From positions 434,001 to 498,000 of the IMG/VR virus record IMGVR_UViG_3300049793_000366: 64,000 nt of DNA. One strand, written 5' to 3'. The translations under genes and the position numbers were made by a program. Below the pieces are notes generated by a model. That model ran no database searches and was not told the origin of the DNA. It saw nothing but the letters and a program-made list of their open reading frames with translations. Positions 11,403-48,264 of the stretch are shown one piece after another. Positions within the stretch are counted from its first letter, which is position 1; the number at the start of each line of letters is the position of its first letter.

Positions 11403-11418
11403 AATTAAACTGCCACAC
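11403..11418 (+). repeat. isolated copy of the 16-bp AATTAAAATGCCACAC repeat family
   Basis: AATTAAACTGCCACAC, 21 nt upstream of the recombinase ATG. Confidence 0.75.
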
Positions 11419-11439: not shown

Positions 11440-12015
11440 ATGAATTCTATACTATTTACAAGGGTATCTACACCACAACAAACACACGATGAACAGGTTG
11501 ATACGCTGACTAAAATATCACAGGATAAAGGCTGGTCAATAGATACAGTATATCGCGAGGTTGGTTCTGGGCTTATTTCAGGTAATTTGAGGGAAACACT
11601 GACAACTATGTTGAAATACATACCAACAACCACAGTGTCAGTAGTAGCAGTTTCAAACATATCTAAGCTATCTTGTAGACCCAATGACGTAGAGAAATTA
11701 ATGACTTGGTTACATAGTAAGGGTATCTCAATATATGTTGCTAATCTTGATATTTTATCAATTGGTAATGAAGATATAATTAGAGAGCAAGCATTGTTAG
11801 CAGAGCAACAAATTAATCAAATGAAGAGTAATTATGTTGAGAGTAATAAACTACCAATTGGTAGAAAAGAGGGTTATAGAAAGCCTAAGATATCAATGAT
11901 GCTTGACCACAAAGATGTTGCTGATTTACTTAAGCAGGGATATTCTATACGAAAGGTTGGTGAAATGACTGGTAAAAGCACAACCACCGTACAAAAAGTT
12001 AAAAGATTATTGTGA
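11440..12015 (+). CDS. serine recombinase (resolvase/invertase family) with C-terminal HTH
   Basis: FTRVST..Q...Q catalytic motif, E.GSG, degenerate SKLSCR, C-terminal HTH GYSIRKVGEMTGKSTTTV. Confidence 0.8.
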   Translation: MNSILFTRVSTPQQTHDEQVDTLTKISQDKGWSIDTVYREVGSGLISGNLRETLTTMLKYIPTTTVSVVAVSNISKLSCRPNDVEKLMTWLHSKGISIYVANLDILSIGNEDIIREQALLAEQQINQMKSNYVESNKLPIGRKEGYRKPKISMMLDHKDVADLLKQGYSIRKVGEMTGKSTTTVQKVKRLL

Positions 12016-34244: not shown

Positions 34245-34392
34245 AATGAGTTAAAATGTATATGCTAAATTTGACTGTTTTCGCAGATTTACATGACGTT
34301 TATGTGAAGCCTGTTTGCGGGAACTATTATAATGCCACACTTGTACCACCTTAGTTGTCAGTCTATGTCTAACCTTGTCAGCCAGTCAGAAC

Positions 34393-34497
34393 CCGTCAGA
34401 TTGTTCATAACTTCTATTTTATCCACAATTTATGGACATAAGGTTGTTGATAACTTTCTATCAGTCTGACGGTAATCTTTTATTAAATTTAAACAAT
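34393..34497. promoter_or_regulatory. DnaA-box-like cluster bracketed by an 8-bp inverted repeat and followed by an AT-rich tract (origin-like)
   Basis: TTATCCACA 34419-27, TGTTGATAA 34445-53, TGTTCATAA 34402-10, TTATGGACA 34430-38; CCGTCAGA 34393 and TCTGACGG 34465. Confidence 0.55.
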
Positions 34498-34713
34498 ATG
34501 GAAACACCAATCACTGATAAACAAATAGTTGAGTATTTAAAATACTTGAAGACCGAATTCACTGAACTATGTAAAACTCCGGATAGGAGTATAAAAGAAA
34601 TGTCTTACCGTAGTGTATTACTTGAGATGTTTCAGATTGAGACTAACAATGAGAAACACTTCGATGTACTTAGTAAAACACTAAATGACTATCGTATATC
34701 AAAGCGTAATTAA
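34498..34713 (+). CDS. hypothetical protein
   Basis: Start moved to ATG 34498; stop codon supplied by the repeat (AAT TAA). Confidence 0.65.
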   Translation: METPITDKQIVEYLKYLKTEFTELCKTPDRSIKEMSYRSVLLEMFQIETNNEKHFDVLSKTLNDYRISKRN

Positions 34714-34790
34714 AATGCCACACCTCAAAGCCTTATTCGGTGAGCATTCAAATTATAATGCCACAGTCTGACGGAGTTAAAGTGCCACAC

Positions 34791-34809
34791 TGCTCGTCTC
34801 CGACTCGCA
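34791..34809 (-). other. GNA-triloop mini-hairpin with tandem G.A mismatches
   Basis: Minus strand TGC-GA-GTC-GGA-GAC-GA-GCA. Confidence 0.6.
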
Positions 34810-34842
34810 TTAAACTACCACACCTTTCGGACATATAATGGT

Positions 34843-35070
34843 ATGTTTCAATCTATGAATGAGTTAGAGGTAAAGGCTGACGGTATGTTATGCTACAATG
34901 GTGTAAAGCTTCTTAGTGTTGAGGCTTTGAGTGACTTTGTATCTCTAACTGGGTTTGAACCTTTACAGGCTTTACAGACGTACTATATAACCACTCAAAC
35001 ACATCAGAGGAATCAAAAGCTTGAGATTCTATTTGATGGAGTTAAAGTGCCACACCTCAAACCGTTATAG
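34843..35070 (+). CDS. hypothetical protein, C-tag
   Basis: QRNQKLEILF, then runs through a repeat copy. Confidence 0.65.
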   Translation: MFQSMNELEVKADGMLCYNGVKLLSVEALSDFVSLTGFEPLQALQTYYITTQTHQRNQKLEILFDGVKVPHLKPL

Positions 35071-35101
35071 GGAGAATAAGTTAGAAGTCTTGTTGAATTA
35101 A
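35036..35101 (+). CDS. 21-aa mini-ORF consisting mostly of the C-tag
   Basis: MELKCHTSNRYRENKLEVLLN*, lying between two repeat copies. Confidence 0.35.
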   Translation: MELKCHTSNRYRENKLEVLLN

Positions 35102-35156
35102 AATGCCACACCTCAACGCCTTATCTGGTAAGGATTAGAATTAAAATGCCACACTT

Positions 35157-35381
35157 ATGTTTAATATAGGAGATAGAGTTAAAGAATTGGGTAGGGATTG
35201 TTATAGGGATGAGCCTATTGAGATAATATCTACGCTCAAGGAGAATAAGCGATATCATTTAAAGTATTTGAATGTATTTAATGTACAGGGTACTAATATG
35301 TTATTCTGGGTTCATGAAGATGATATTATCTTAGACAAGGAGTATTATAGGGATAAGAAGATTAATGAGGTGTTGAATTAA
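35157..35381 (+). CDS. small protein (KOW-like start), C-tag
   Basis: FNIGDRV...YRDKKINEVLN*; flanked by repeats on both sides. Confidence 0.8.
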   Translation: MFNIGDRVKELGRDCYRDEPIEIISTLKENKRYHLKYLNVFNVQGTNMLFWVHEDDIILDKEYYRDKKINEVLN

Positions 35382-35392
35382 AATGCCACACT

Positions 35393-35812
35393 TTATCTTT
35401 CTCTATCAACTTCCATTTTCATAATAGCCAGACATTCTTGAACATCTGCTACGATTTCATCAGCAGTAGCTTTGGTTGACTGCATGGTTTTCATAGACAT
35501 TTCAATCATTCTGATGGAGCTTTGTAGGCTTTTAATAAGTCTAATCTCTTCTTCTCTTGCTATATCGAGACCTTGTTGTATACCTAACTGTACTGCACAC
35601 GCCATAACCGATTCTACGTGGCTTCTGCCCTGTTCTTTTCTGCTGTACTCTAAGTTGCGTTTATTGAGTTGTACATCGATGTTTTGGCTTGTGGCGAGTA
35701 ATTTACTGGATGTGAGCATAACACCGTCATATGCTTCGAACTTTTTATTAACGATGATTGCGTTATAGGCTTTCATAATGCCTTTCATAATATCGGGAAA
35801 TGTATTTTTCAT
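35393..35812 (-). CDS. hypothetical protein
   Basis: Start moved to MKNTFPD. Confidence 0.7.
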   Translation of the reverse strand: MKNTFPDIMKGIMKAYNAIIVNKKFEAYDGVMLTSSKLLATSQNIDVQLNKRNLEYSRKEQGRSHVESVMACAVQLGIQQGLDIAREEEIRLIKSLQSSIRMIEMSMKTMQSTKATADEIVADVQECLAIMKMEVDRER

Positions 35813-35823
35813 GTCTTGTTGTA

Positions 35824-36030
35824 TTAGAATATTGATGGGAATATTAGGTCTAAAGCACCTGCGAGATATAATAGTATCATTATAAGAAGAGATATGCCAA
35901 TTTTCCAATTTCGCTCTCTTTTAAACATTTCTTTTGCTTCATCTGAATACTGTTCCATGAAGTTCAAGGAACTAAATATAACATATACTGTGAATATAAA
36001 TAAGATGAGTATTTGTATAAATAATTTCAT
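35824..36030 (-). CDS. small membrane protein
   Basis: Two hydrophobic segments; promoter upstream. Confidence 0.7.
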   Translation of the reverse strand: MKLFIQILILFIFTVYVIFSSLNFMEQYSDEAKEMFKRERNWKIGISLLIMILLYLAGALDLIFPSIF

Positions 36031-36073
36031 ATTATGATTAATTTATTAGTTGATATCTTTAGTGTATGGTTTG

Positions 36074-36105
36074 TAAATATACGGATAATATTCCGGATCT
36101 CCAAA
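36074..36105 (-). promoter_or_regulatory. Bacteroidota-type promoter with palindromic spacer
   Basis: TTTG-gagatCCGGAATATTATCCG-TATATTTA. Confidence 0.8.
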
Positions 36106-36143
36106 TGAAAACAACTTAGATAGGGTTGTATCGTATAATTAAA

Positions 36144-36401
36144 ATGCCACACCAACCATATCATATGTTATTACCGAAGGTTCGAAATGTATCACCGAGT
36201 ACATTGGGTCAGAATATACAGATTATTAACACTGCGTATATGATACCAATGCGAAAGTGTTGTGATTGTGGTAATGTGATTAATATAATAGATGATGAGT
36301 TTGAGACAAAGCCTCGTATGTTTTTGTGGGTTAAGTTGGAGACTGATTATAGGTGTTGTGTATGTATGCGTGATAATAAGATTCGTAAGATATTTAAGTG
36401 A
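36144..36401 (+). CDS. CxxC...CxxC small protein, C-tag
   Basis: ATG supplied by the repeat (MPH); CCDCG...CCVC-MRDNKIRKIF. Confidence 0.7.
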   Translation: MPHQPYHMLLPKVRNVSPSTLGQNIQIINTAYMIPMRKCCDCGNVINIIDDEFETKPRMFLWVKLETDYRCCVCMRDNKIRKIFK

Positions 36402-36625
36402 TGTCTGGACTTACTTGTATATGTAAAGCTGACCATGCTTATCGGTTTATCAAGGGTAGGACTTATACTTATATGATAATTAATGGGCGGTTTAGTGTTT
36501 TAAATAGGGATGCTAAGACTTGGTATAACTTTCACGATGATAACTTCCATGATGATTCGGTTAATTTTCACTTATTTTTTGAGTCTATACGTGATTATAA
36601 TCTAAATGAATTACTGAGCGAATAG
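36398..36625 (+). CDS. CxC-family small protein, C-tag
   Basis: LTCICK...KGRTYTY...IRDYNLNELL. Confidence 0.8.
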   Translation: MMSGLTCICKADHAYRFIKGRTYTYMIINGRFSVLNRDAKTWYNFHDDNFHDDSVNFHLFFESIRDYNLNELLSE

Positions 36626-36626
36626 A

Positions 36627-36658
36627 TTTGGTAATACCGGACTTTATCAATATATTTG
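36627..36658 (+). promoter_or_regulatory. Bacteroidota-type promoter
   Basis: TTTG-N20-TATATTTG, ATG at 36663. Confidence 0.75.
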
Positions 36659-36662
36659 AAAT

Positions 36663-36788
36663 ATGAAAGCATTCTTAAGAATAATCACTTTTTATAGAGT
36701 AAATGATGTAGACTACGTACCTAATGGGTGCTTAGGATTAATATTCTGGCTTATAGTGATAGGTATAGTATTAGCAATCGCGAATTAA
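36663..36788 (+). CDS. 41-aa membrane peptide (absent from ORF track)
   Basis: MKAFLRIITF...CLGLIFWLIVIGIVLAIAN*; promoter upstream; stop lies within the repeat. Confidence 0.6.
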   Translation: MKAFLRIITFYRVNDVDYVPNGCLGLIFWLIVIGIVLAIAN

Positions 36789-36789
36789 A

Positions 36790-37047
36790 ATGCCACACCA
36801 CTTCAAATGTATATGTAAGAATGAGTATCTACAATCCGGTAGGGAAGATACTTTAGTTATCTTCATACTCAATGAGATATATCTGGTGGAGAATACCGCG
36901 AGTGGGAACTACTTATTAACTGGTAATATCCGTAGTGGTGATAATATTTTGCGTGAAATAGTATCTTTAGATGATGTAGGCTTTAAACGCTATATGATGC
37001 ACATAGACGAGTATAGGGAGAATAAGTTAGAAGCATTGCTTAATTAG
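36790..37047 (+). CDS. CxC-family small protein, C-tag
   Basis: ATG from the repeat (MPH); KCICK...YRENKLEALLN. Confidence 0.8.
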   Translation: MPHHFKCICKNEYLQSGREDTLVIFILNEIYLVENTASGNYLLTGNIRSGDNILREIVSLDDVGFKRYMMHIDEYRENKLEALLN

Positions 37048-39821: not shown

Positions 39822-39871
39822 TAATACAAATATAGCGAATTATTATGACATTTAATATATACTCTAAACAA

Positions 39872-40600
39872 ATGAGTAAGATGGACACACGATATAAGTT
39901 AAAAGAGGTGGGGAGATTTATTAAAGCACTCAGCAATGACTATAAGAATACGGTTGATACTGATATAAAAGCTAAGAAGAAGAAAGCTATATGGAAAACA
40001 GTATGCTTGACATTCGACCAGATTTGGAGTGGGATATCAGCATTGTTTGTTTATCCTATTTGGTATGCTTTCAGAAAGCAAATAACTAATACCTTATATG
40101 AAGGTACTACCTGGGAAGCCGTTCATCAATTGGTGGTTGATAATAAGATTGATGAGGTGAAGTATATTGTCAAACGAAAGGGTGCTTTATTGTATTGGTT
40201 ATGGACTTTTGGTGACTTGAGAGATCCATTAGGTAGAGGTGAGTTACCGGAAGATGGGTATAAAGGTAGGTATAAGAATAACTTCGTAGGGAGATATTAT
40301 GAGAATGCTTTGCGTAATCCAAGGTTTACTATTAACTATATGAATTATCGAACTGGTACCATAGTAGAATCGCATACGGTGATTGATACCAGAGATTATA
40401 ATATATCGTATTCATCAGAGGGTATTGGTAAGAATCCTGCGGGTGTATTATTCAAATGGGTGGTTGATGATAAGAATAAGTGGTATTATGTCTATGATGA
40501 TAATAACAAGGAGAACTTATTTTACTTTGGGTATTCTGGTTTGGGTAAAACTGATATTGGTAAGAATGGTAGGTTTGAGATTAGTTACAGAAAAAATTGA
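39872..40600 (+). CDS. hypothetical protein (possible membrane segment)
   Basis: AATATATA upstream; start moved to 39872. Confidence 0.75.
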   Translation: MSKMDTRYKLKEVGRFIKALSNDYKNTVDTDIKAKKKKAIWKTVCLTFDQIWSGISALFVYPIWYAFRKQITNTLYEGTTWEAVHQLVVDNKIDEVKYIVKRKGALLYWLWTFGDLRDPLGRGELPEDGYKGRYKNNFVGRYYENALRNPRFTINYMNYRTGTIVESHTVIDTRDYNISYSSEGIGKNPAGVLFKWVVDDKNKWYYVYDDNNKENLFYFGYSGLGKTDIGKNGRFEISYRKN

Positions 40601-44857: not shown

Positions 44858-45116
44858 CGGTCTACCAATAAAAACCTGCGTATGTATTAAGAACTACGCT
44901 AAACGAAACGATACCTATCGCTATACCATCGGTGAGGTCTATAAGTATCAAGTAGTCAGTCATTATATAAGCCCTGATGTATGGCGTGTCTATACCACTG
45001 ATGCAGACTATGACTTCTATGAAGTATCAAAGGATCCATGCGAACCAAAGATAATTGAGTACTTTCAAGATATACAAACGAATAGGGATTCTAAACTTAA
45101 GAAGCTATTGAAATGA
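44850..45116 (+). CDS. CxC-family small protein, C-tag
   Basis: TCVCIK...IGEVYKY...NRDSKLKKLL. Confidence 0.8.
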   Translation: MINGLPIKTCVCIKNYAKRNDTYRYTIGEVYKYQVVSHYISPDVWRVYTTDADYDFYEVSKDPCEPKIIEYFQDIQTNRDSKLKKLLK

Positions 45117-45499
45117 CAGCACCCGAACTAATAGAGTATTTAGAGCGATTGGGATTCATTATGGATTCTTATACCAGTATGATGGAGTTCATCACCCTAC
45201 ATCTACGCGATAAAGATATTGGTGCTAATGTGAATAACCTAAGTGGTGTATCAATAAGTATCTGTAAGAGTAAAGGAGTCTATCATCAACAGTATAGTGA
45301 TAAGCCAAACATATTCAGTATTAAGTATGAGCTAACGGATCATATAGACTTCAATACGAAGATGCCCGTTAGAAGCCATCAGATGAATCACTATACAATA
45401 GATGGTGTGTTGGAGTTCCTCGTAGAGAATCGAATTGGTAAACCGGATGTATTAAGAGAAGCTATCATTGAATTAAACTGCCACAGGCTCTTGAATTAA
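45113..45499 (+). CDS. hypothetical protein ending within repeat copies
   Basis: The last codons (LNCHRLLN*) are encoded by two repeat copies. Confidence 0.75.
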   Translation: MTAPELIEYLERLGFIMDSYTSMMEFITLHLRDKDIGANVNNLSGVSISICKSKGVYHQQYSDKPNIFSIKYELTDHIDFNTKMPVRSHQMNHYTIDGVLEFLVENRIGKPDVLREAIIELNCHRLLN

Positions 45500-45589
45500 A
45501 ATGCCACACCAACTAATTAAACTACCACATCCGAAACCCTTACTGGATAAGACTTAGAATTATAATGCCACACTTAGAAATGTGGATAA
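45471..45589 (+). repeat. second cluster of the 16-bp repeat (4 copies) plus a perfect DnaA box
   Basis: Copies at 45471, 45494, 45515, 45558; TGTGGATAA at 45581-89. Confidence 0.85.
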
Positions 45590-45716
45590 GGTATGCCGCC
45601 CTTCTGATTATCGTAATGCTCCTTGATACGTTTCTCCCTTTCTGCCTCTAACTTTTCTTTCTCAAGCTTCTCAACTTTCTCAGTTAGTTCTTTTATCTTT
45701 AATTCTTCTGGTGTCA

Positions 45717-46184
45717 TTAGTATATACTGTATGATGGGTTATATGATTTGACGAATGGCTTACCATTGAATGTATGCGTACAACACTTACAGTTCGGATG
45801 TAAGTCTTCATTCTTGAACTCTGGGTTAACCAATTGAAGTATGTTATTACTATCAACGAATAGACCACTGTAATAGCTACTCTCACCACAACATACATAA
45901 TCACGCTTCTTGCTATCATCTTCTGCTACCAGATGGTAGATTGGTTCAGACTTATCTAAACGACTGATGGCTTCGCTATACACTTCATCCCAGTCTTTAC
46001 CTACCTTTGATAGTAAGAAGCGATACAACGGTGTATAATCAAGCCCACGCTCAACGCCTTTCTTAAGTGAATGACTCATACCCTTCTTAGTGGATCTGTC
46101 GTTCTTAGCATCACCACCGAAGTTATGATGTACACCACGGGCTTTAGTGTTCTGCTTTCTATATAGAGGTTCTTTCTGTTTCAT
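45717..46184 (-). CDS. hypothetical protein
   Basis: GLDYTPLYRFLLSKVGKDWDEVYSEA; C-terminal CxCC..H. Confidence 0.75.
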   Translation of the reverse strand: MKQKEPLYRKQNTKARGVHHNFGGDAKNDRSTKKGMSHSLKKGVERGLDYTPLYRFLLSKVGKDWDEVYSEAISRLDKSEPIYHLVAEDDSKKRDYVCCGESSYYSGLFVDSNNILQLVNPEFKNEDLHPNCKCCTHTFNGKPFVKSYNPSYSIY

Positions 46185-47363: not shown

Positions 47364-47395
47364 CAAATATACGGATAATATTCCGTATTACCAAA
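47364..47395 (-). promoter_or_regulatory. Bacteroidota-type promoter with palindromic spacer
   Basis: TTTG-gtaatACGGAATATTATCCG-TATATTTG. Confidence 0.85.
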
Positions 47396-47780
47396 TACGT
47401 TTGTTTACCTCAATACTACCAGAGGTATAGAACCTTAATCTATATGGATTCTCCTTATCATTCCATTGATAAATGATACCTACGTTATCCATGTCACACT
47501 TACGGGCAAGCTTTGTAAGCCTACCGAAGATAGCATCCTCTATCCTATAACGAATCTCTCTACCATCAAGAGCATACTTCAATTCTTTGTGTCGCCATAG
47601 GTCTCGTCTGATACGGGTATCTTCATTGAAGTCTATCTCAGTAATGACGGTGATGTTATGTGGGTAGTTGGGTGGATATAGTTCACAGCGGGCTAATGTC
47701 AAGTCTGGTTGATTCTCCAGCTCGAAGCTGAATATATCTAAGATACTTAGCTCAGTCTTATTAGGATCACGCATCAACAT
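47388..47780 (-). CDS. hypothetical protein
   Basis: Co-oriented ORF. Confidence 0.75.
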   Translation of the reverse strand: MLMRDPNKTELSILDIFSFELENQPDLTLARCELYPPNYPHNITVITEIDFNEDTRIRRDLWRHKELKYALDGREIRYRIEDAIFGRLTKLARKCDMDNVGIIYQWNDKENPYRLRFYTSGSIEVNKRIW

Positions 47781-48232: not shown

Positions 48233-48264
48233 CAAATATACGGATAATAATCCGGAATATCAAA
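48233..48264 (-). promoter_or_regulatory. Bacteroidota-type promoter with palindromic spacer
   Basis: TTTG-atattCCGGATTATTATCCG-TATATTTG. Confidence 0.85.

What the first reader, a model, noticed from the sequence alone, without database searches (positions are those of the whole stretch)
45471..45589. Second repeat cluster, 10 kb away, repeats the 43-bp pair architecture and again has a perfect DnaA box
Seen: four copies (spacings 23, 21, 43 bp), a spacer CCCTTACTGGATAAGACTTAG resembling those at 34724 and 35112, and TGTGGATAA 8 nt after the last copy, at a convergent gene junction. Inference: a satellite control site (like P1 incA copy-control iterons or a datA-like sink), or a partner recombination site that could excise the 34-45 kb segment.
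Basis: partly seen in the sequence, partly recalled or inferred. Interest (0 to 1): 0.6.

Follow-up and report, generated by a model that had tools for sequence, protein, structure and literature searches.

The report
Gene-boundary repeat array in huge phage
The four repeats are real, but they belong to a phage-specific gene-boundary signal (most likely a portable promoter that also acts as a recombination patch), not to a replication-control site, and the nearby DnaA box is at chance level.

Summary
Four direct copies of a roughly 17-nt motif (consensus ttGAATTAAAATGCCACACyT, here called M) lie at 45471-45572 with spacings 23, 21 and 43. TGTGGATAA follows 8 nt later, at a convergent gene junction.

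The interpretation mostly does not hold.
- M occurs 16 times in this 508-kb huge-phage genome, always on the + strand, and only between window 11.4 and 45.6 kb.
- M recurs, with the same strand rule, in 14 metagenomic contigs of related phages.
- In 28 of 31 scorable clusters, M lies between the stop codon of one small ORFan gene and the start of the next gene on the same strand.
- Cassette gains and losses between near-identical relatives break at M.
- This is the anatomy of a portable regulatory cassette, like the PeSLs of T4-type phages. It is not the anatomy of iterons.

The 45.5-kb array is one of only three clusters with no gene downstream.
- Copy 1 is the C-terminal coding DNA of gene 45113-45499 and is conserved in orthologs.
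- Copy 2 carries that gene's stop codon.
- Copies 3-4 repeat the 43-bp unit found at 34708 and 35096.
- The nearest relative has no array here; its two convergent genes overlap.

The DnaA box is at chance level and lies inside a small ORF. Promoter activity is inferred, not shown, because no RNA data exist.

The parts
45471..45485 (+). M copy 1 (AAACTG variant). It lies inside gene 45113-45499 and encodes part of the C-terminal residues ..IELNCH...
   Evidence: The orthologs in L044 and L049 end ..IELKCH.. and ..IELKCR.. at the same place.
45494..45508 (+). M copy 2 (consensus form). Its TAA at 45497-45499 is the stop codon of gene 45113-45499.
45515..45529 (+). M copy 3 (..CTACCACA variant), the first arm of the 43-bp pair.
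45530..45557 (+). 28-nt spacer of the 43-bp pair. It is related to the spacers at 34723-34750 and 35111-35138. It holds a weak 4-bp hairpin (CTTA, loop CTGGA, TAAG) at 45539-45551.
   Evidence: Alignment A1. The fold is weak (-1.2 kcal/mol), and RNAalifold finds no consensus pairs.
45558..45572 (+). M copy 4 (TATAAT variant), the last M copy in the whole genome.
45581..45589 (-). DnaA-box-like nonamer TTATCCACA. It lies inside the small - ORF (codons P-Y-P-H). Its TGTGG pairs with CCACA of M copy 4, giving a 7-bp stem on the - strand at 45568-45585.
45113..45499 (+). 128-aa ORFan gene whose 3' end carries M copies 1-2. Orthologs are in L044 (52% identity) and L049 (48%).
45574..45717 (-). 47-aa K/E-rich ORF, the last gene of the - strand operon. 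Its start overlaps the stop of the gene before it (TAATG). Its stop lies 1 nt from M copy 4.
   Evidence: It has no ortholog in L049, so whether it is a real gene is uncertain.
45717..46184 (-). 155-aa Cys-rich protein of a highly conserved huge-phage family. It anchors the synteny with relative L049.
34325..36797 (+). Main M territory, 11 copies: 34325; 34708/34751/34775/34808; 35040/35096/35139; 35376; 36137; 36783. It includes the two other 43-bp pair units.
11403..11417 (+). Leftmost M copy, 22 nt upstream of the serine recombinase gene. An M copy also lies upstream of the ortholog in L021.
11440..12015 (+). Small serine recombinase (resolvase domain plus C-terminal HTH), the only one in the genome.

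Best explanation
The cluster is a local four-copy array of a lineage-specific gene-boundary cassette, M (ttGAATTAAAATGCCACACyT), in a roughly 0.5-Mb phage of a Bacteroidota-type host. M behaves like the PeSL cassettes of T4-type phages in two ways. (1) It is a cis signal tied to the direction of transcription, and most likely a portable phage-specific promoter. It has a -10-like TAnAnT hexamer, then GCCACAC, no -35 element, and gives very short leaders. It sits on or beside the stop codon of one small ORFan gene and 0-50 nt before the start of the next. (2) Its near-identical copies serve as short homology patches at which small cassettes are gained, lost and swapped. The 45.5-kb array is an atypical array with no gene downstream. 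Copy 1 is the conserved C-terminal coding DNA of gene 45113-45499. Copy 2 supplies that gene's stop codon. Copies 3-4 are another copy of the 43-bp unit seen at 34708 and 35096. A block of - strand genes starts 1 nt after copy 4. The array is therefore best read as a recently built, dispensable recombination junction at the right-hand edge of the M territory. If the copies still fire, they send antisense transcripts into the convergent operon. Shown here: the distribution, strand rule, positions, breakpoints, and presence or absence in relatives. Inferred: promoter activity, the factor that reads M, and the recombination mechanism.
For: Distribution: 16 copies, all on the + strand, only at genome 445-480 kb, none elsewhere in 508 kb.
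Relatives: 13 contigs from the pair-pattern scan plus L044 carry M. Scan contigs hold 2-14 copies, always on one strand per contig and co-oriented with the small genes.
Position: in 26 of 31 scorable clusters a co-oriented ORF starts -8 to +51 nt from the last copy, and in 2 more at 92-140 nt. Only 3 clusters have no downstream gene.
Divergent junctions: M is the only conserved motif before the first + gene at window 11403 and 36137, and at L021 193.
Portability: the Zn-ribbon gene 36144-36401 carries M in the window, while its L055 ortholog sits inside an operon without M.
Parallel geometry: the genome's two other promoter-like motif families are P1 (Bacteroidota -33/-7 type) and P2 (TAATATATAC). 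P2 ends 3-6 nt before the ATG, the same geometry as M.
Variation: changes inside M fall on hexamer positions 3 and 5, and the motif's ATG is not conserved.
Breakpoints: 5 of about 10 distinct synteny breakpoints among near-identical relatives lie within 10 nt of an M, and a sixth lies within 3 nt on one contig of its pair; background is 8.8%. One locus has three alleles: a gene, a 28-nt hairpin spacer, or an 8-nt spacer, each bounded by M.
Variable context: L032 has M around the ortholog of window 39845-40600, where the window has none.
This locus: L044 keeps one M at the same gene end, followed by P2 and a + gene. L049 has no array and only a 13/16 coding remnant.
Neighbours: all neighbouring genes are ORFans.
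Known analogues: PeSLs (PMC2839356, PMC4122927) and halovirus HF2 intergenic repeats that carry promoters (PMC8707807).
Against: No RNA data exist, so no transcription start is shown; the only run holding this DNA is the DNA source run.
M does not match the host-type promoter (TTTG / TAnnTTTG) that P1 matches. The phage's only sigma factor is ECF-like and would need both -35 and -10 elements about 16 nt apart, which M lacks.
This array and the single copy at 35376 point into the 3' ends of convergent genes, where a promoter has no gene to serve.
In several junctions the downstream gene seems to start at the ATG inside M, which a start site downstream of the hexamer would miss.
Tandem copies show spacing modes of 23 and 43-44 bp, with a period of about 10.5-11 bp. 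That spacing would also fit cooperative binding of a protein.
The stem-loop component of a true PeSL is weak or absent here.
Confidence: 0.55

Rival explanations
1. M is a polar, sequence-specific terminator, insulator or roadblock site, read on DNA or nascent RNA by a phage factor. Arrays at operon ends stop + strand transcription before it collides with convergent genes.
For: The first copy of most clusters overlaps or abuts the stop codon of a co-oriented gene. The largest orphan arrays lie at or before the 3' ends of opposite-strand genes: window 45.5 kb with 4 copies, and L016 with 7 strict copies or 9 under the looser pattern. In L012 and L044, M precedes a separate P1 or P2 promoter of the next gene. 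The helical phasing of tandem copies fits a bound protein.
Against: M also stands where no + transcription arrives: after the divergent junctions at 11403, 36137 and L021 193. It has no hairpin or U-tract, and the cluster is less structured than shuffled sequence. 'Upstream of a co-oriented start' holds more often (28 of 31 clusters) than 'downstream of a co-oriented stop'.
Confidence: 0.15
2. M acts at the RNA level. It could be a translation-initiation or coupling module in a host without Shine-Dalgarno sites (stop UAA, 1 nt, AUG), or a binding or cleavage site for a phage RNA-binding protein, as with T4 RegA or RegB.
For: M contains a TAA and an ATG 1 nt apart. Upstream ORFs often stop at that TAA, and downstream ORFs start at that ATG or 3-9 nt later, often as ..TTATGA... 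The genome lacks SD sequences. The orientation is strictly that of the mRNA.
Against: The ATG is not conserved: 14 of 76 copies read CTG, including all but one copy of the L020 array and four of the seven strict copies in L016. Tandem arrays and arrays with no downstream gene have no ORF to serve. M also occurs far (20-50 nt) upstream of start codons.
Confidence: 0.1
3. M copies are crossover sites of the small serine recombinase at 11440-12015. This would be an integron-like cassette system, and the 45.5-kb array would be the distal partner site.
For: The leftmost M lies 22 nt upstream of the only serine recombinase gene, and an M also lies upstream of its 60%-identical ortholog in L021, although the DNA further upstream is unrelated. 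All copies are direct repeats. Cassette indels break at M.
Against: M has no dyad symmetry, and no copy lies on the other strand. Copy number and spacing vary freely, unlike res or hix sites. M-bearing contigs mostly show no recombinase, though they are short. The breakpoints are equally explained by homologous exchange at 16-60 bp repeats. The contigs show no deletion joint.
Confidence: 0.07
4. One reading: iterons of a satellite copy-control site, or a DnaA-titrating sink linked to an origin at 34-35 kb.
For: The repeats are direct, of iteron-like length, and spaced about 2 and 4 helical turns apart. One perfect DnaA box lies close to each of two M loci, at 34419 and 45581.
Against: In relatives, M flanks almost every small gene in the arrays, with up to 14 copies in 2.9 kb. 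No Rep-like gene lies nearby. DnaA boxes are at chance frequency, and this one is coding. Both boxes share the CCACA core of M, which can explain why they lie near it.
Confidence: 0.03

Closest known systems
PeSL (promoter-early stem-loop) cassettes of T4-type phages (Arbiol et al. 2010, PMC2839356; Comeau et al. 2014, PMC4122927)
   Same: Both are short conserved repeats at gene boundaries in ORFan-rich, plastic regions. Both begin at the stop codon of the upstream gene and end at the start of the next, and are co-oriented with the genes. In both, insertions, deletions and replacements between close relatives break at the repeats.
   Different: M does not match the host-type promoter; in this genome that role is taken by the separate P1 family. 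M has only a -10-like hexamer plus GCCACAC. The stem-loop is weak or missing. M often stands in tandem (periods 23 and 43-44 bp). The host is Bacteroidota-type and the genome is about 0.5 Mb. Promoter, terminator and mini-circle activities are untested.
Halovirus HF2 intergenic repeats that carry promoters (PMC8707807)
   Same: Both are families of conserved intergenic repeats in a viral genome that mark the starts of transcription units.
   Different: HF2 is an archaeal virus with an archaeal promoter type and longer repeats (29 and 58 bp). No role at cassette breakpoints is claimed in that paper's abstract.
T4 late and middle promoters (TATAAATA; MotA box), from my own knowledge
   Same: Both are phage-specific promoter classes without a -35 element, embedded within or at the ends of early transcription units.
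   Different: No gp55, MotA or AsiA homolog was looked for or found here. M is longer and much more strictly conserved.
Iteron arrays (P1 oriR/incA, SPP1 oriL/oriR), from my own knowledge
   Same: Both are direct repeats of about 17-22 bp in two or more separated clusters.
   Different: M is spread over many gene junctions, follows gene orientation, and has no linked initiator gene. Its arrays are not conserved in position.

Membership tests
Iteron origin / copy-control locus (P1 incA type) | Repeats confined to one or two loci next to or inside a replication initiator gene | tested here: not met
   There are 9 loci in the window and up to 14 copies in 2.9 kb in relatives. Pfam and PHROGs find no Rep-like neighbour.
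Iteron origin / copy-control locus (P1 incA type) | Locus conserved in position among relatives | tested here: not met
   The nearest relative (L049/L055) has no array at the orthologous convergent junction.
datA-like DnaA sink | A cluster of several DnaA boxes, above chance | tested here: not met
   There is a single box at the cluster. The window holds 2 against 0.92 expected, and the genome 11 against about 7.5. The box lies inside ORF 45574-45717.
PeSL-type mobile regulatory cassette | Conserved motif at stop/start boundaries of ORFan genes in plastic regions, co-oriented with the genes | tested here: met
PeSL-type mobile regulatory cassette | Indel and replacement breakpoints between close relatives coincide with the motif | tested here: met
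   5-6 of about 10 distinct breakpoints lie within 10 nt of an M, against an 8.8% background.
PeSL-type mobile regulatory cassette | Contains a host-sigma early promoter (both promoter boxes) | tested here: not met
   M lacks the Bacteroidota -33 TTTG / -7 TAnnTTTG pair that the P1 family has. It has only a TAnAnT hexamer.
PeSL-type mobile regulatory cassette | Stable stem-loop acting as terminator or attenuator | tested here: inconclusive
   Some spacers in relatives fold at -8 to -10 kcal/mol, but the window spacers fold at -1 to -4.5. There is no consensus structure, and the cluster z-scores are +0.8 and +1.1.
PeSL-type mobile regulatory cassette | Promoter activity and mini-circle formation | not testable with these tools
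   No RNA run holds this DNA. Contigs cannot show rare circles.
Serine recombinase site (res / hix / gix) | Dyad-symmetric pair of half-sites around a central crossover | tested here: not met
   M is asymmetric by inspection, and no reverse-strand copy exists in 508 kb.
Serine recombinase site (res / hix / gix) | Site adjacent to the recombinase gene | tested here: met
   M at 11403 lies 22 nt before gene 11440-12015, and an M also lies upstream of the L021 ortholog.
Integron attC array | Imperfect inverted repeats folding into a hairpin, plus a tyrosine integrase | tested here: not met
   There is no hairpin in M. The only linked recombinase is of the serine type.
CRISPR array or solitary repeat unit | Repeats of about 23-50 nt separated by unique spacers of similar length | tested here: not met
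   The core is about 17 nt, spacers are 4-30 nt, and the spacers are themselves conserved between loci.
Intrinsic terminator | G+C-rich hairpin followed by a U-tract | tested here: not met
   There is none on the + strand. The - strand has only a weak 7-bp stem, 45585-45568, formed by CCACA and TGTGG.

The most novel reading that the evidence does not exclude
M copies are the recombination sites of the adjacent small serine recombinase. This would make an integron-like system in a huge phage that captures, shuffles and expresses ORFan gene cassettes, with each M supplying a stop codon, a promoter or start context, and the crossover point. The 45.5-kb array would be the distal end of the cassette field.
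Probability: 0.07. Interest if true: 0.75.

Novelty: new variant of a known kind. Interest (0 to 1): 0.35.

Why it matters
If M is a portable promoter that also serves as a recombination patch, then the 'mobile regulatory cassette' way of building ORFan-rich regions is not a peculiarity of T4-type coliphages. It would also operate in half-megabase phages of Bacteroidota-type hosts, with a signal that the host's main sigma factor does not read. That would give a concrete handle for three tasks: finding the factor that reads M, mapping the temporal gene classes of an uncultured huge phage (P1, P2 and M), and tracing how accessory genes move between such phages. For genome annotation, it warns against calling origins from direct repeats plus a lone DnaA box.

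Tried and rejected
- Phage GenBank collection: no DNA match to 44-47 kb and no protein match to the 128-aa gene.
- IMG/VR: the pair-pattern scan and three protein-based scans found nothing. A profile scan with the recombinase found one 23%-identical hit with no informative repeats.
- The distant huge phages LR756502 and LR745206 hold M only at background level.
- The genome contigs pair scan gave 3 unrelated hits, including a coding tandem repeat in Ekhidna.
- Rfam found no family in the window.
- There is no paralogy among the M-flanked genes of the window.
- Reads: the only holder is the DNA source run, kept as contigs. One contig crosses the whole stretch with no differences. The listed 'joints' and loose ends are cross-matches of the P1 promoter repeat and of M itself.
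- A T7-like RNA polymerase was not found, but the control genomes were also silent, so this says little.
- A conserved hairpin in the 43-bp spacers was not supported by RNAalifold.
- Reading M as a -35-type box 11 nt before TATAAT (T4 MotA-like) fits only copies 11403 and 34808, so I dropped it as a general rule.
- The 23-aa hydrophobic + ORF after copy 4 is the expected antisense product of a K/E-rich frame, so I did not take it as a gene.
- The window's 47-aa - ORF is not related to the 80-aa gene at the same position in L049.

Full report
**Setting.** The window is bases 434,001-498,000 of a single 507,910-bp contig with 33% G+C. The contig carries 62 tRNA genes, a tmRNA and a CTA-anticodon suppressor tRNA. 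The record is a virus entry with 97% estimated completeness, classed as a provirus. A 709-aa protein in the window is 68% identical to proteins of two uncultured phages of 634-642 kb. Large ORFs almost never have a Shine-Dalgarno sequence; only 9% do. About 30 sites match the Bacteroidota promoter form TTTG-N20-..TATATTTG, here called P1. About 45 sites carry TAATATATAC 3-6 nt before an ATG, here called P2. That TTTG/TAnnTTTG is the Bacteroidota promoter form is from my own knowledge. This is therefore a huge phage of a Bacteroidota-type host with at least two promoter-like motif families.

**The observation.** Four direct copies lie at 45468/45491/45512/45555, with spacings 23, 21 and 43.
- The 15-nt core has 16 sites in the window, all on the + strand, against 0.63 expected. 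Only two weak near-matches (2 mismatches, on the - strand) occur elsewhere in the genome, and the stricter core pattern finds none outside the window.
- The 28-nt spacer of the last pair aligns with those at 34723 and 35111.
- TGTGGATAA sits 8 nt after the last copy.

The DnaA box carries no weight. There are two in the window against 0.92 expected, and 11 in the genome against about 7.5. This one lies within a 47-aa - strand ORF (45574-45717), whose start overlaps the stop of the preceding gene. Its TGTGG is simply the complement of the CCACA of copy 4.

**What the motif is.** A paired-motif scan of metagenome contigs returned 34 stretches. Thirteen of them (29-33% G+C) hold 2-14 copies each, always on one strand per contig and co-oriented with rows of small genes.
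- The consensus is ttGAATTAAAATGCCACACyT. Eleven positions of the 13-nt core were fixed by the search pattern, so their invariance is not an independent result.
- Variation within the core falls at hexamer positions 3 and 5 of TAAAAT. The internal ATG is not conserved: 14 of 76 copies read CTG.
- I scored 34 distinct clusters: the window, the 13 contigs and L044. Three run off contig ends. Of the other 31, 26 have a co-oriented ORF starting -8 to +51 nt from the last copy, and 2 more at 92-140 nt.
- Only three clusters have no such gene: window 35376, the array in L016, and the cluster under review.
- The first copy usually overlaps the stop codon of the upstream gene.
- At divergent junctions (window 11403 and 36137; L021 193), M is the only conserved motif ahead of the first + gene.
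- The Zn-ribbon gene 36144-36401 starts at M in the window. Its ortholog in L055 lies inside an operon with no M.
- P2 has the same 'motif, then 3-6 nt, then ATG' geometry as M.

Together these results point to a portable, phage-specific promoter class. That is an inference, because no RNA run holds this DNA.

**M as a recombination patch.**
- Among near-identical contigs (L015, L018, L021, L023, L025, L030, L035), about ten distinct synteny breakpoints can be told apart. Five lie within 10 nt of an M copy and a sixth within 3 nt on one contig of its pair, where 8.8% of positions do so.
- One locus exists in three forms: a 114-aa gene, a 28-nt hairpin spacer, or an 8-nt spacer, each bounded by M.
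- L032 and L022 have M before and after the ortholog of window gene 39845-40600. The window has none there.
- Neighbouring genes are all ORFans.

This is the behaviour described for PeSL cassettes in T4-type phages (PMC2839356, PMC4122927). M differs from PeSLs in three respects. It does not match the host promoter form. The stem-loop is weak or absent in the window. Tandem copies are common, with modes at 23 and 43-44 bp and a period of about 10.5-11 bp (the intervals are not independent).

**The 45.5-kb array itself.** Gene 45113-45499 reads through copy 1 (..IELNCH..) and stops at the TAA of copy 2.
- Its 52% ortholog in L044 ends ..IELKCHTLLS, with one perfect M at the same place. A P2 motif and a co-oriented gene follow.
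- Its 48% ortholog in L049 ends ..IELKCRSLLT, with a 13/16 remnant of M.
- L049 has no array at all. The convergent genes overlap by 9 nt, even though the convergent partner (the 155-aa gene, 83% identical) and many other genes of window 41-69 kb are shared.
- No M copy occurs in the 27 kb of that contig that I read, while P1 and P2 are kept.
- So copy 1 is old and doubles as coding sequence. Copies 2-4 are not shared with either ortholog-bearing relative.
- Copies 3-4 with their spacer are a further copy of the unit at 34708 and 35096.
- A - strand operon, with P1 copies at 47374 and 46640, ends 1 nt after copy 4. At 35376, another - strand cassette likewise ends 2 nt after a lone M.

I read the array as a young, dispensable junction at the right-hand edge of the M territory. 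It may still fire antisense into the convergent operon or shield it. This part is inference.

- Iterons or a DnaA sink: the features tested are not met (see the membership table).
- A partner recombination site: this is supported only in the sense that M copies are exchange points for small cassettes. The source-run contig crosses the cluster with no differences, and the 'joints' listed there are repeat cross-matches. Contigs cannot exclude rare circles.
- The serine recombinase link is real but thin. It rests on one M upstream of the gene in two lineages. M has no dyad symmetry.

**Verdict.** The repeat cluster is real but was misread. It is an ordinary kind of element (a mobile regulatory cassette) in an unusual carrier, with an unusual motif. 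The recombinase-linked, integron-like reading remains open at low probability.

Noticed in passing
window 47364-47396 (-), 48233-48264 (-), 44051, 42600, 38004, 36084 (-), 18908, 52962 (+); about 30 in the genome: The P1 family is a roughly 32-nt, very strongly conserved promoter-like repeat (TTTGgtaatCCGGAatattatCCGTATATTTG) of the Bacteroidota -33/-7 type. It occurs on both strands and is enriched at genome 470-507 kb. It is far more conserved than a sigma factor needs, and it also cross-matched in the read-laying step.
   Followed up: partly
window 24514, 38382, 39853, 48268, 56692 (+); 22616, 26707 (-); about 45 in the genome: The P2 family is TTTTAATATATAC ending 3-6 nt before an ATG, on both strands across the genome. 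Many of the genes behind it begin MK(H/Y)(L/I)K.F(E/N), which suggests a large paralogous family with its own promoter class. L044 and L049 carry P2 as well.
   Followed up: partly
window 45717-46184 (-): This 155-aa Cys-rich protein has no Pfam or PHROG match but more than 1,700 homologs at up to 83% identity (55-83% among the 120 listed). Several lie on contigs of 350-720 kb. It looks like a conserved huge-phage gene of unknown function.
   Followed up: partly
window 11440-12015 (+): This is the only serine recombinase of the genome (resolvase domain plus HTH). It lies in a divergent promoter region opposite a P2-driven - gene. Its ortholog in L021 is 60% identical.
   Followed up: partly
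window 34355-34400, 34462-34470, 34766-34774, 34874-34882: A second short repeat family (GTCAG / CTGACGG) is interleaved with the M copies of the main cluster. I did not analyse it further.
   Followed up: no
window 36664-36788 (+): An unlisted 41-aa ORF with a hydrophobic C-terminal half lies directly behind a P1 promoter (36627-36658). Its stop codon is the TAA of the M copy at 36783.
   Followed up: no
genome 121630-121702; tRNA fields at 319-432 kb; genome 59956-60348: The genome holds a suppressor tRNA with anticodon CTA, 60 other tRNAs and a tmRNA. I did not test whether TAG is recoded in part of the genome; all ORFs here were read with table 11.
   Followed up: no
genome 112758-113378 (L041:1420-2040): The phage encodes an ECF-like sigma factor (regions 2 and 4). 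Its target promoters are unknown. P2 or M are candidates, but neither has an obvious -35 / -10 pair.
   Followed up: partly
whole record: The window's own proteins are listed as lying on a contig of 711,805 bp, while the record held here is 507,910 bp and classed as a provirus.
   Followed up: no
window 35393-36136: A - strand cassette (171-aa and 68-aa ORFs with their own P1 promoter at 36084) lies exactly between two + strand M copies (35376 and 36137). The 68-aa ORF has a homolog in L022 that is co-oriented with M there.
   Followed up: partly
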